Shown: positions 21,241 to 24,303 of the stretch, in pieces
How the letters are laid out: each line of letters starts with the position of its first letter
How positions within the stretch are numbered: the first letter of the stretch is position 1
Assembly: GCA_053919585.1 (NCBI GenBank)
Contig: CM132807.1
Strand: one strand, 5' to 3'
Length of the DNA stretch: 64,000 bases
Origin: Euprymna scolopes
Lineage: Eukaryota
Program-made: the position numbers and the translations under genes
The notes under the pieces: model-generated
What the model was told of the DNA's origin: nothing
Databases searched by the model: none
The model's input: the letters and a program-made list of their open reading frames with translations, nothing else

Positions 21241-21446
21241 GCAGAAATGTATCTGTAATTTGATTGTCCCCCCCCTCCCCAACCTTTCTTCTCCAGAACC
21301 TTTTACTCACAGAAACTATGTTGCTAGTCTCAGTGTATCCAAGTGACTATCGTTTAATTGTTATGGCCTTCCATTTCTTGTAATAAATAATTTTACCAAG
21401 AATTCTTTATAAGTTTTGGTTTCGATGATAGCTGAAGGAACTGAAG

Positions 21447-21502
<56 letters not shown>

Positions 21503-22063
21503 AAAATTACAATTGAATTTACCAAAATGATCCAAGATGGTAAAATTAAAGTAAATTATAAATATTAAAGAATTAATATTTATAAAATTATCTCAGCCAG
21601 ATAAAAAAGCTCGATAAAACCAAATAGGAATTAGCAAAATGCGGGATCAGATTTTGCATGCAGAAGTATTTAAACAACAAGTAAGTCAAAGATCTAACTT
21701 GAAAACAAAAAAAGTGAAGCAGAGGGAATATGGTGAAGAAAAAGGTGATTACACACGAATGGATTTTATCTTCCACCAGACTATCCATTCGTGTGTAATC
21801 ACCTTTTTCTTTACCGTATTCCCTCTGCTTCACTTTTTTTGTTTTCAAGTAAGATCTTTGACTTACTTGTTGTTTCATCAAATACTTCTGCATGCAAAAT
21901 CCGATCCTGCATTTTGCTAATTCCTGCCCTCTGATGAGAAGGAAAATATTTCTTTGAAACTCCGCGGATTAAGGACTATCCATTTATCTAGTGTTTCCTT
22001 TTCAGATTAAATGTTTTTTAATTCATTTCAAAGTGTTTTTTAACATATTTTATTAACTGTTTG

Positions 22064-22111
<48 letters not shown>

Positions 22112-24303
22112 CATAAGTTTTGGTTTTGGTTTAAGCTGATACATCCAAGTCATATAGATATTTTTTTTGTTTTTGAAATCGCAACTTTATAATATATACG
22201 AATCGATAGAACGTTAACTCTATAATATATACAAAATCTGCAAGAATTAAAATATCATTTTAAGTGTATTTTATGCCAGGTGCCCCTGTTAGCTTAGATA
22301 AATACTTTTGCAGTTTTAACAAAAGAGCTACAATATCGGAGCATCTTCATTTACACTGAACATCTACAGAATGTCAACATCAATATATTACATATGAATG
22401 AGTCTCTTGTGGGATTTTCACAGGTCCCACTAGTTTTTTATAAATACTATTATGGTATATGTTCTTCAAATTCTTCAAAATTGCCTGATCAATTCCCTCC
22501 TTTTGTTCCAGCTCGTTTGAAACGTAAGTCTAGTGATCTCCATCAATTCTGCTGTTTTGGTTCCTCATTGTAATACAGCTTTTTATTTCAGTAGCTTCTT
22601 TCCAAAAACCACAAGGTTGTGGAACTCTCTTCCTGCTGACTGTTTCCCCCAACTTTTAACCTTGGTCTTTTCAAGACTAAGGTCAATAGGCTTCTTTTGT
22701 CTTTATGATAATCATCTCTTGTTCTTGTTTGTTCCTTATATAAAGTAGCTTTATGCCTCGTCTAGATGGATTTTCGTAAAAAAAGAAAAAGAGAAGAGAA
22801 AGATCAATGGTATTTCAGAGTTTTCCTTCTCTTAGATGTGTTGCACAATCAAAGCCTAAGAGTCTAGTCTTTCCTATTTAATGCAGAGCTGGGGGGAGAA
22901 TATATGGATTCATGCTTTTTGCGAGAGTATTAGTGAAAATGATGCAATAGAAATGTTGAAATGATGAAAAGAATGAAAAGTATAATAAATAAAATGAAGA
23001 AAAAAAAATGTCTCAAAAACTGTGCCATTTTGCAAGGCAAATTGAACTGTCATGCACACGATTCTCTTTAAATCGAATCGATAAATACTGCTTTATGTGG
23101 TAATGTACAGGGCGATCTTAGAAATGCACTCACACACCTGGGATATCAGATTTTCCACATTCGGAGATCTGTCATGGCAACCGAGTATTTTTTCGTAAAA
23201 TAGCTCTAAAACTGTCATAAAAATGTCTCTCCAAAATGGCACTTTAAAGCACAATCCCATAATAGTATTTATAAAAACTAGTTACAATTCGACAAAAACA
23301 AACTGAACACATTTTAAATGGTCTAATAAATTTAACTTTGTATTACATTTCAAAATGAGACATTATGACTGGTTTTGAGTTATGTTTTTTTAAGCTACTT
23401 ATTCTACACACACATACTGTAGCACGATAATGTTTGATGATTTTCGGCTGAACAGTTTGAGAAATGCTGCAATATATTCTTTCAACCGTGACTTTGGTTT
23501 GTCTATATTTAGACTGTTCAGTATAAGATGGCACGCAAGATAAAATTCATTTGACGGTTGGATATGTTGCACAGGCAGAGAGTTGCCAATACCTGCTTTA
23601 AACTAATATAAAATAATTTTTAAACAATTTTTTAGAGCATGCAACAATAATTTGAATAATTATGTATATAAAGGTATAAAATTTAAACTCTGTAGATTAG
23701 GATTTAGAAACGATTTATTATTTGACAAGGAATATACAATAGACATTCAGAAATTCTTATAATAAGCTCTATTCCCTGTTTGGTATATTGAGCCTTTTCA
23801 TCTGGTTAGGAGTATCCTATAAATATTAGTGTTAATAATTGTTGTGTCAATAACAACACGAACGCAGAAAGTAAAGGTAAAACAAATATATTAAGACGAA
23901 AAGATAATACATATTTACAAGGTGCAGTTGTACTGCAGTTGGAAGATTGTCCAGCAGAGGGCGTGTTAAAGTCTTTCATGGAGCAACCGGCACATGCGTC
24001 TTGCCTATCTGGCTTTTGAACACAGCTCTCCGGTCTTGCTGACTTGATACCTTTATCTATACCTTGTTCACCCACGTATGCTAATTAGTGGGCGTCTCCA
24101 CAACAATAATCATATTCGGTTTATGTTTACAGACTAACTCAATTAGTAAGCTTAACAATACCTGTTTTGAATATATATATTTTTTTAATTTTTAAACGAT
24201 AAGCGTCTTCAACCATGAAGATCTTTTTCCTTAGAAAATCACCTATATTTTGTTTGGATGTAAACAAATAGTATTTATTTATTTTTTATATTATTTATAA
24301 AAG

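What the first reader, a model, noticed from the sequence alone, without database searches (positions are those of the whole stretch)
21385..22360. Empty-site/filled-site pair shows a hammerhead-bearing element inserted into a (TA)n microsatellite
Seen: the repeat at about 415-800 has one (TA)n tract (671-697). Its inverted paralogue at 21385-22360 has the same flanks, but the tract is split in two (21450-21497, 22067-22095) around a 570-nt insert holding a 300-nt hairpin and a hammerhead. The insert's last 70 nt or so recur at about 45245-45320, again next to (TA)n. Inference: the element family targets TA microsatellites.
Basis: partly seen in the sequence, partly recalled or inferred. Interest (0 to 1): 0.7.

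Follow-up and report, generated by a model that had tools for sequence, protein, structure and literature searches.

The report
Penelope-like retroelement inserted in TA microsatellite
The 569-base insert is a truncated, two-armed copy of a very abundant Penelope-like retrotransposon that landed in the (TA)n tract of an older repeat; the empty/filled pair is real, but the TA targeting and hammerhead motif are known habits of this transposon class.

Summary
Window 411-880 and the reverse complement of 21350-22359 are paralogous copies of an old dispersed repeat. Copy A has one (TA)n (671-697). Copy B has (TA)25 and (TA)15 around a 569-nt insert (21498-22066).

Two other copies of the host repeat also carry (TA)n at that site and lack the insert. 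So this is an insertion into an existing microsatellite, not a deletion in copy A.

The insert belongs to a Penelope-like element (PLE). Longer copies link the same 3' UTR to an ORF with a telomerase-like reverse transcriptase and GIY...YIG motifs. Unit order is 3'UTR with hammerhead core, short end (...GCTC), 137-nt "tail", ORF.

The family's terminal 19-mer occurs 16,490 times. In an unbiased sample, 33 of 39 non-tail ends touch (TA)>=5, against 0.8% TA in the window.

The 300-nt hairpin is two head-to-head 5'-truncated copies. One ends at the tail and one at the short end, which is the usual PLE insertion scar.

The hammerhead core is far beyond chance, but no Rfam model recognises it and cleavage is unproven.

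Other agents of this scan read other DNA of this genome the same way. Verdict: real, well explained, a new member of a known kind.

The parts
411..880 (+). Host repeat, copy A (the 'empty site'). An old dispersed repeat with an uninterrupted internal (TA)n at 671-697.
   Evidence: The family has at least 2,709 first-look candidates at 85-91% identity.
21350..21447 (-). Host repeat, copy B: the part that corresponds to copy A downstream of its TA tract.
   Evidence: BLAST 83-84% identity to copy A; alignment; sequence read.
21448..21497 (.). (TA)25, the left half of the split microsatellite.
21498..21634 (-). Outer part of the inverted arm: the PLE 137-nt 'tail', antisense. Its 3' terminus (...CATTTT) abuts the left (TA)n; this is the 'T end'.
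   Evidence: 97.7% identity to the tail of a natural copy. The tail lies between the short end and the ORF start in L042 and L045.
21625..21764 (-). Inner part of the inverted arm (3' UTR segment upstream of the hammerhead). It joins the tail through a 10-nt microhomology (CTAWTTCCTA, 21625-21634). This join skips 157 nt, including the hammerhead and the short end.
21764..22066 (+). Direct arm: the 3'-terminal 303 nt of the PLE 3' UTR, 5'-truncated. It ends ...TGTTTGCTC (the 'S end') at the right (TA)n. Positions 21765-21782 form the hairpin loop.
   Evidence: 96.5% identity to a natural copy. Most genomic hits cover exactly this part at 96-98% identity.
21928..21974 (+). Hammerhead-type motif. 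Helix I is CCU/AGG (3 bp). The core is CUGAUGA at 21931-21937. Helix II is 21938-21944/21949-21955 with loop 21945-21948. GAAA is at 21956-21959, followed by the palindromic UCCGCGGA. The predicted cut lies between 21971 and 21972. The window copy has U where the family has C11.1.
   Evidence: There is no Rfam hit.
22067..22096 (.). (TA)15, the right half of the split microsatellite.
22097..22359 (-). Host repeat, copy B: the part that corresponds to copy A upstream of its TA tract.
   Evidence: 84% identity over 294 nt.
45244..45314 (+). A separate insertion of the same family, severely 5'-truncated (last ~75 nt). It ends at (TA)n 45315-45328 inside a compound CA/TA microsatellite.

Best explanation
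The insert is one retrotransposition event of a canonical Penelope-like element with a C-terminal endonuclease, into the (TA)n microsatellite of an older repeat.

Shown:
- Longer copies of the family encode a telomerase-like RT followed by a Cys-rich linker and GIY...YIG motifs.
- The unit order is 3'UTR (hammerhead core), ...GCTC, 137-nt tail, ...CATTTT, about 45 nt, then the ATG of the ORF. Copies therefore have two alternative 3' termini: S (GCTC) and T (tail end).
- 5' ends are variably truncated.
- Both termini almost always abut (TA)n.
- Many insertions are head-to-head pairs.

Inferred, following the in vitro model for the anole PLE (PMC11167929):
- The GIY-YIG nuclease cuts both strands inside the AT repeat.
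- Each 3'-OH primes antisense cDNA from an internal start site on the element RNA.
- Here the left end used the tail-end site and the right end used the GCTC site.
- The two cDNAs grew toward each other and were joined near unit position ~724-743, which produced the 300-nt inverted repeat.
- The left arm skipped 157 nt at a 10-nt microhomology, either by template jump or by later slippage.

The hammerhead-type motif is the family's pLTR ribozyme motif of the 'PLE/min-HHR' style, with a long helix II, a short helix I and a palindromic helix III that implies action as a dimer. In this copy it is only a passenger and carries a C11.1-to-U change.
For: Protein evidence:
- An RT/EN ORF is physically linked to the same 3' UTR. 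In L033/L036 a 564-aa ORF is followed by the element at 94% identity. L038 (886 aa) and L044 (761 aa) carry ADKT, YRDD, CNC..CPL..C, VIY...YIGAT.
- The AlphaFold model of the L044 ORF (pLDDT 74) has TERT chains as its best PDB matches: 3du5 E=5.9e-10, 6zd1, 6zdq.
- There are 886 homologues at 32-42% identity. The best named one is from the cephalopod Argonauta, with a weak Pfam GIY-YIG match; another has a weak RVT_1 match.

Structural evidence:
- Unit order with the tail between the S end and the ORF is seen in L042 and L045.
- Upstream direct and inverted pLTR copies are present.

Copy number and targeting:
- S 19-mer 16,490 exact matches; followed by (AT)5 4,291; followed by tail 1,598; T 19-mer 2,659.
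- In the unbiased sample, 33 of 39 S ends touch (TA)>=5, and 5 of the other 6 touch interrupted TA or CA/TA tracts.
- (TA)n usually lies on both sides.
- All 10 head-to-head insertions in the unbiased sample, 6 more loci and the window pair an S end with a T end.
- Pre-existing TA is seen in paralogous empty sites.

Hammerhead core: beyond chance and conserved in subfamilies that are 77-84% identical overall.

Literature: (TA)n targets, inverted 5'-truncated copies, one-sided tails and HHRs in PLEs (PMC8557442); min-HHR traits (PMC4209133); cleavage and extension of both strands, with the tail lying between two RT start sites (PMC11167929).
Against: - No Pfam family matches the ORFs of this genome.
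- No PDB sequence or profile hit was found.
- The GIY and YIG motifs are separated by a low-complexity insertion of about 125 aa. The EN fold was not tested on its own.
- The PLE clade was not determined by phylogeny.
- The tail is 137 nt, not the 30-40 bp described for other PLEs.
- The hammerhead is not recognised by any Rfam model. It has only a 3-4 bp helix I and a C15.2/U16.2 mismatch. No compensatory changes are available because the copies are too alike.
- The RNA data are assembled contigs only and cannot show a cleavage site.
- The two-strand priming mechanism is inferred from genomic scars and from another species' enzyme.
Confidence: 0.9

Rival explanations
1. The element is an autonomous-looking 'retrozyme'. 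That would be a small non-coding hammerhead retroelement that cycles through circular RNA and is only mobilised in trans by PLEs. It would not be a truncated copy of the PLE itself.
For: Most copies are short and ORF-less. There is a possible excess of 5' ends at unit positions ~700-745 (9 of 41). Animal retrozymes are reported to derive from PLE pLTRs (bioRxiv 10.64898/2026.07.22.740005). Contigs from polyA RNA-seq libraries hold the sequence.
Against: The same sequence is contiguous with the RT/EN ORF in several loci at 94% identity. 5' ends are spread from position 15 to 998, as expected for 5' truncation. There are no direct tandem repeats of the hammerhead unit, which retrozyme processing requires. 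No circular-junction evidence was found.
Confidence: 0.06
2. The (TA)n tracts are made by the element. They could arise by RT slippage or untemplated addition at its ends, or by expansion after insertion. On this view the element does not target pre-existing tracts.
For: TA tracts flank nearly every copy and are often long. The filled site carries 40 TA units in total, against 13.5 in copy A.
Against: Three insert-free paralogues of the host repeat carry (TA)n at exactly this site. Hundreds of further copies have (A)n(TA)n there. TA lies on both sides of 5'-truncated copies, including at random 5' breakpoints. Published PLE nucleases prefer AT-rich DNA.
Confidence: 0.03
3. The insert is a DNA transposon: a foldback element or MITE with a TA target-site duplication, or a Helitron inserted between A and T. 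On this view the hairpin is its functional inverted repeat.
For: There is a 300-nt inverted repeat and flanking TA.
Against: The inverted repeat is internal. The termini (AAAATGAAAA... and ...TGTTTGCTC) are not inverted repeats of each other and are not TC...CTRR. Palindrome centres and arm lengths differ between loci. The sequence is the 3' UTR of an RT-encoding element.
Confidence: 0.01

Closest known systems
Canonical C-terminal-EN Penelope-like elements (Neptune/Nematis-type and Penelope/Poseidon; Arkhipova 2006; Craig et al. 2021, PMC8557442)
   Same: Single ORF with a TERT-like RT, then a Cys-rich linker and GIY-YIG motifs. pLTR and partial-tandem unit order. 5' truncation. An inverted 5'-truncated partner copy. 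A tail at one end only. A hammerhead motif near the 3' end. Insertion into (TA)n. High copy number in an aquatic invertebrate.
   Different: The tail is about 137 nt rather than 30-40 bp. The Cys spacing is CxCx5Cx5C, and I did not match it to the published CX2-5CxxC motif. A low-complexity insert of about 125 aa splits GIY from YIG in the two intact-looking ORFs. The clade was not placed by phylogeny.
PLE 'minimal' hammerheads (Cervera & de la Pena 2014, PMC4209133)
   Same: Perfect CUGAUGA/GAAA core. G10.1-C11.1 in family-typical copies. An unusually long helix II (7 bp) and a short helix I. A small palindromic helix III/loop 3 (UCCGCGGA) that cofolds as an 8-bp intermolecular helix. Location in the pLTR.
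   Different: There is no unpaired base between positions 9 and 10.1. There is a C/U mismatch at 15.2/16.2. No covariation could be shown. Activity is untested, and published PLE hammerheads themselves cleave poorly in vitro.
Anolis Poseidon PLE in vitro system (Frangieh et al. 2024, PMC11167929)
   Same: AT-rich target. Both DNA strands are cut and extended. There are two internal RT start sites, and the spacing between them defines the tail. The hammerhead is dispensable for insertion.
   Different: In that system no strand difference in start-site use was seen. Here the genomic two-armed insertions pair one S end with one T end in every case examined.
Animal non-LTR retrozymes (PMC7229834; bioRxiv 10.64898/2026.07.22.740005)
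   Same: Hammerhead-bearing, PLE-related, non-coding copies that are present in RNA-seq assemblies.
   Different: There are no tandem hammerhead repeats and no circular-RNA evidence. The sequence is contiguous with the coding element.

Membership tests
Penelope-like element (EN+) | Reverse transcriptase of the PLE/telomerase-like type | tested here: met
   ORFs in L033, L038 and L044 carry ADKT and YRDD motifs. The AlphaFold model's top PDB matches are TERT chains (3du5 E=5.9e-10). A homologue has a weak RVT_1 match. No Pfam hit on the ORFs themselves.
Penelope-like element (EN+) | GIY-YIG endonuclease in the same ORF, C-terminal to the RT | tested here: inconclusive
   The motifs CNC..CPL..C, VIY, YIGAT..R..H align with homologues. 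The homologue consensus continues with CxxC...E...CxH. The Argonauta homologue gives Pfam GIY-YIG at E=0.0023, below the cut-off. No Pfam hit on this genome's ORFs. The EN fold was not searched separately.
Penelope-like element (EN+) | pLTR / partial-tandem organisation (the 3' UTR sequence also lies directly upstream of the ORF) | tested here: met
   In L042 and L045 the order is 3' UTR, tail, about 45 nt, then ATG.
Penelope-like element (EN+) | [quoted passage not shown] | tested here: met
   5 of 44 S ends continue into the tail. The tail sits at one end only in all 17 two-armed insertions. Its length of 137 nt is atypical.
Penelope-like element (EN+) | Adjacent inverted 5'-truncated copy forming inverted repeats | tested here: met
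   Seen in the window insert, in 10 of 40 unbiased loci and in 7 further loci.
Penelope-like element (EN+) | Insertion bias for (TA)n or AT-rich DNA | tested here: met
   plus the empty-site paralogues.
Hammerhead ribozyme | Conserved catalytic core (C3-A9, G12-A14, A15.1/U16.1, H17) | tested here: met
   CUGAUGA...GAAA...UA| is seen in the window and in 60 or more copies. The core with helix II is beyond chance.
Hammerhead ribozyme | Three helices with supporting covariation; match to the curated covariance models | tested here: not met
   No Rfam hammerhead family matches at E<=10 on the window copy or on a typical copy. Helix I is 3-4 bp. There is a 15.2/16.2 mismatch. Only one-sided A-U to G-U changes are seen.
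Hammerhead ribozyme | Self-cleavage | not testable with these tools
   Only assembled contigs of RNA runs were available. No read ends could be examined.
Animal non-LTR retrozyme | Head-to-tail tandem repeats, each with a hammerhead, giving circular RNA | tested here: not met
   There are no direct repeats of the unit in the insert or in the sampled loci.
MITE / foldback / Helitron | Terminal inverted repeats (or TC...CTRR ends) with constant termini | tested here: not met
   The termini are unrelated to each other, and the 5' ends vary.

The most novel reading that the evidence does not exclude
In this family every two-armed (head-to-head) insertion examined pairs one short end (GCTC) with one tailed end, 135 nt further along the unit, and never two short ends. 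There are 17 such insertions, 10 of them from an unbiased sample.

This would mean that the two RT start sites are not alternatives chosen at random. Instead they would be used together, one on each strand of the same double-strand break. A likely agent is the two halves of a dimeric PLE ribonucleoprotein on one RNA. That would also explain why many tailed arms stop at or near the short-end site.

This goes beyond the published in vitro result, which saw no strand difference. Together with the unusually long 137-nt tail, it would make this genome a natural record of the PLE integration geometry.
Probability: 0.3. Interest if true: 0.5.

Novelty: new member of a known kind. Interest (0 to 1): 0.27.

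Why it matters
The paralogous empty and filled sites give direct, sequence-level evidence that this retrotransposon family lands in pre-existing (TA)n tracts and does not create them. The thousands of young copies in a 5.9-Gb, probably cephalopod, genome form a large natural data set on Penelope-like integration. That data set covers two 3' termini, one-sided tails and head-to-head arms.

For annotation, it explains a class of "hammerhead hairpins in TA repeats" that recur across this genome as ordinary PLE insertion scars. They need not be read as a new ribozyme system or as microRNA-like genes. The Rfam miRNA near-hits on the hairpin are artefacts of the inverted repeat.

Tried and rejected
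- Rfam, at gathering and at permissive thresholds, on the window and on a typical copy. It gave no hammerhead, only spurious sub-threshold miRNA hits caused by the hairpin, plus two 5S-like hits elsewhere.
- Pfam on three ORFs of this genome and on seven homologues. It gave nothing above the cut-offs.
- PDB sequence search and profile search. No hits.
- Covariation test of the hammerhead. Not possible, because 69 distinct copies, including subfamilies, are nearly invariant there. A sliding-window conservation scan showed the whole last ~230 nt conserved, with no specific peak at the ribozyme.
- RNA evidence. Only Logan contigs were available. They show that the sequence is present in polyA RNA-seq assemblies of three studies but cannot show ends. 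Summed contig depth falls 3-10 fold just after the predicted cut, which I do not treat as evidence.
As a result the unbiased sample is 44 ends, and more host-repeat copies could not be read. Pattern counts were used instead.
- Rejected readings: deletion in copy A, MITE/foldback, Helitron, and TA tracts made by the element (see the rival explanations).
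Full report
**Observation**

Window ~411-880 (+) and the reverse complement of 21350-22359 are paralogues. They share 84% identity over 288 nt on one side of a TA tract and 83-84% over ~105 nt on the other.

Copy A has a single (TA)n at 671-697. Copy B has (TA)25 at 21448-21497 and (TA)15 at 22067-22096, and these enclose 569 nt (21498-22066).

The insert holds a long inverted repeat. The arm pairs are 21672-21764/21783-21875 (93 nt, 97%) and 21626-21686/21865-21925 (61 nt, 85%). As RNA it folds at -234.8 kcal/mol, z = -28.

A hammerhead-type core sits at 21928-21974. 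The last ~79 nt of the insert recur at 45244-45322, next to (TA)n 45315-45328.

**Insertion or deletion?**

The host sequence is itself an old dispersed repeat, with at least 2,709 first-look candidates at 85-91% identity. Two more copies happened to lie in loci I had fetched (L021, L043). Both have (TA)n at the same position and no insert.

Genome-wide, the 15-mer that precedes the tract occurs 3,432 times. On the largest contig, about 20 of about 100 such sites are followed by (TA)5 within 14 nt. That denominator also includes internal repeat units of the host element.

The insert, in contrast, belongs to a separate family with thousands of copies. So copy B is a filled site and copy A an empty one, and the microsatellite predates the insertion. 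The host copies differ by about 15%, whereas the insert is 96-98% identical to many other copies. The insertion is therefore much younger than the host repeat.

**What the insert is**

A search of the window's own genome (5.9 Gb, 925 contigs) with the insert gave 3,743 first-look candidates. Most hits cover only its last 303 nt.

Their flanks show that the family extends about 730 nt further upstream. It ends ...TGTTTGCTC, followed either directly by (TA)n or by a 137-nt extension ending ...CATTTT and then (TA)n.

Walking upstream in three loci led into an open reading frame. Searching with that ORF returned 43,972 first-look candidates. They include intact-looking ORFs of 886 aa (L038) and 761 aa (L044). 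These carry:
- an ADKT motif;
- the YRDD polymerase motif;
- a WFNPPF block;
- a Cys-rich CNC..CPL..C linker;
- VIY...YIGAT..R..H.

No Pfam family and no PDB sequence matched. However, an AlphaFold model built on 24 homologues (pLDDT 74) finds telomerase reverse transcriptases as its best structural matches (3du5, E = 5.9e-10).

The homologues are 32-42% identical. The best named one is a hypothetical protein of the octopod Argonauta. They show weak RVT_1 and GIY-YIG Pfam matches.

In L042 and L045 the unit order is 3' UTR with the hammerhead core...GCTC, the 137-nt tail, about 45 nt, then the ATG. Other loci have direct or inverted 3' UTR copies upstream of the ORF.

This is the organisation of a canonical Penelope-like element (PLE): pseudo-LTRs, a tail, and a hammerhead near the 3' end. 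For this class, (TA)n targets, inverted 5'-truncated partner copies and one-sided tails have been described (PMC8557442). I did not place the RT in a PLE clade.

**Targeting of (TA)n**

Exact matches to the terminal 19-mer number 16,490, with 0 for the reversed control. Of these, 4,291 are followed directly by (AT)5 and 1,598 by the tail.

The base after GCTC varies, so I took the first 44 sites on contig 1 as an unbiased sample:
- 5 continue into the tail.
- 33 of the other 39 have (TA)>=5 within 2 nt.
- 5 more have short or interrupted TA, or compound CA/TA tracts.
- 1 has none.

In the window, (TA)>=5 tracts occupy 0.77% of the bases (17 tracts). That gives a binomial p of about 1e-96. The 5' side of truncated copies is usually (TA)n too.

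**Anatomy of this insertion**

Mapped on natural copies, the insert has two arms.
- The right arm, 21764-22066 (+), is unit positions 724-1035. It ends at the short (S) terminus against the right TA tract.
- The left arm is antisense. Its tail segment (21498-21634) has the tail (T) terminus against the left TA tract.
- The tail segment is joined through a 10-nt microhomology (21625-21634) to unit 743-886 (21625-21764).
- This join skips 157 nt that include the hammerhead and the S terminus.

Both outer ends of the insert are therefore 3' ends of the element. This is what is expected if both 3'-OH ends of a break in the TA tract primed cDNA synthesis, as the purified Anolis PLE does in vitro (PMC11167929). 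The 300-nt hairpin is the by-product of two cDNAs covering the same region. It is not a functional module.

**The hammerhead**

Family-typical copies read CCU-CUGAUGA-GAAGGAA-AGUA-UUCUUUC... in the sense of a perfect core. The features are:
- a G10.1-C11.1 pair;
- a 7-bp helix II;
- GAAA;
- a palindromic UCCGCGGA;
- U-A, then AGG pairing back to CCU.

The window copy has U for C11.1. RNA-run contigs show the family letters at 21946 and 21955.

A core with a helix II of at least 5 bp arose in 14 of 20,000 shuffles of the element. One with at least 7 bp arose in none.

The long helix II, short helix I and palindromic helix III match the PLE hammerheads of PMC4209133. Two copies cofold through the palindrome.

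Against this:
- No Rfam hammerhead model scores it.
- 15.2/16.2 is a C/U mismatch.
- No compensatory change exists among the 69 distinct copies.
- The RNA data cannot show cleavage.

I rate "PLE-type hammerhead motif" as likely and "active ribozyme" as open.

**Seen beyond the finding**

In the unbiased sample, 10 loci are head-to-head insertions, and all pair an S end with a T end. So do 6 further loci and the window. The T-end 19-mer occurs only 2,659 times against 16,490 for S. If ends were chosen independently, ten T partners in a row would have p below 1e-4, even at a T frequency of 0.4.

Many T arms consist of tail only, and some stop exactly at the S site. This agrees with the published remark that the tail is often at one end only. 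It suggests a coordinated use of the two start sites on the two strands, which I offer as the novel case.

**Comparison and verdict**

This is a Penelope-like retrotransposon insertion, a known kind. Penelope elements are already reported as abundant in coleoid cephalopods (PMC8967140).

Other agents of this scan reached the same reading on other windows of this genome. I saw those notes only after my own analysis.

The empty/filled pair is a clean demonstration of targeting, and the long tail and the S/T pairing are modest additions. Confidence in the main explanation is 0.9, interest 0.27.

**Limits**

- Only contig-level RNA data were available.

Noticed in passing
L049-L080 (unbiased sample), L002-L012, window 21498-22066: Every head-to-head (two-armed) insertion of this family pairs one short end (GCTC) with one tailed end, never two short ends. 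Many tailed arms are tail-only, and some stop exactly at the short-end site.
   Followed up: partly
unit positions ~700-745 (window 21740-21785 equivalent); loci L049, L050, L060, L064, L071, L081, L082, L085, L087: 5' truncation points and palindrome centres cluster here (9 of 41 arms in 45 nt). This may be a preferred RNA 5' end or an RT stop.
   Followed up: no
window 21855-22076: In contigs of three polyA RNA-seq studies, summed depth is highest just upstream of and over the hammerhead core. It falls 3-10 fold after ~21966, near the predicted cut (21971/21972). This is opposite to what 5'-truncated DNA copy number would give. Contig depth is unreliable, so this is only a hint.
   Followed up: no
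window 7166-7283 (-) and 35920-36038 (+): Two 5S rRNA-like sequences pass the Rfam gathering score (48 and 62 bits) but have imperfect terminal helices. The second is followed by non-rRNA sequence, so these are probably 5S-derived SINE heads or pseudogenes.
   Followed up: partly
window 23754-23807: A diverged fragment (84%) of the short-end/tail junction of the same PLE group, with no TA flank. It is probably an old decayed copy.
   Followed up: no
L038:1078-3738, L044:1501-3786: Both intact-looking PLE ORFs carry a low-complexity, Asn-rich insertion of about 125 aa between the GIY and YIG halves of the nuclease motif (pLDDT below 50). Both end shortly after the YIG block, before the CxxC...E...CxH part present in homologues.
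   Followed up: partly
window 411-880, 21350-22359; L021, L043: The host repeat is a dispersed family (at least 2,709 candidates). It has internal ~75-nt tandem units and its own (A)n(TA)n microsatellite. Its class (SINE or other) was not determined.
   Followed up: partly
window 45160-45350: The 79-nt PLE stub sits inside a palindromic compound microsatellite locus (...CACATTTGTGTGTGTGTA(TA)n ... (TA)nCACA...CACAAATGTGG).
   Followed up: no
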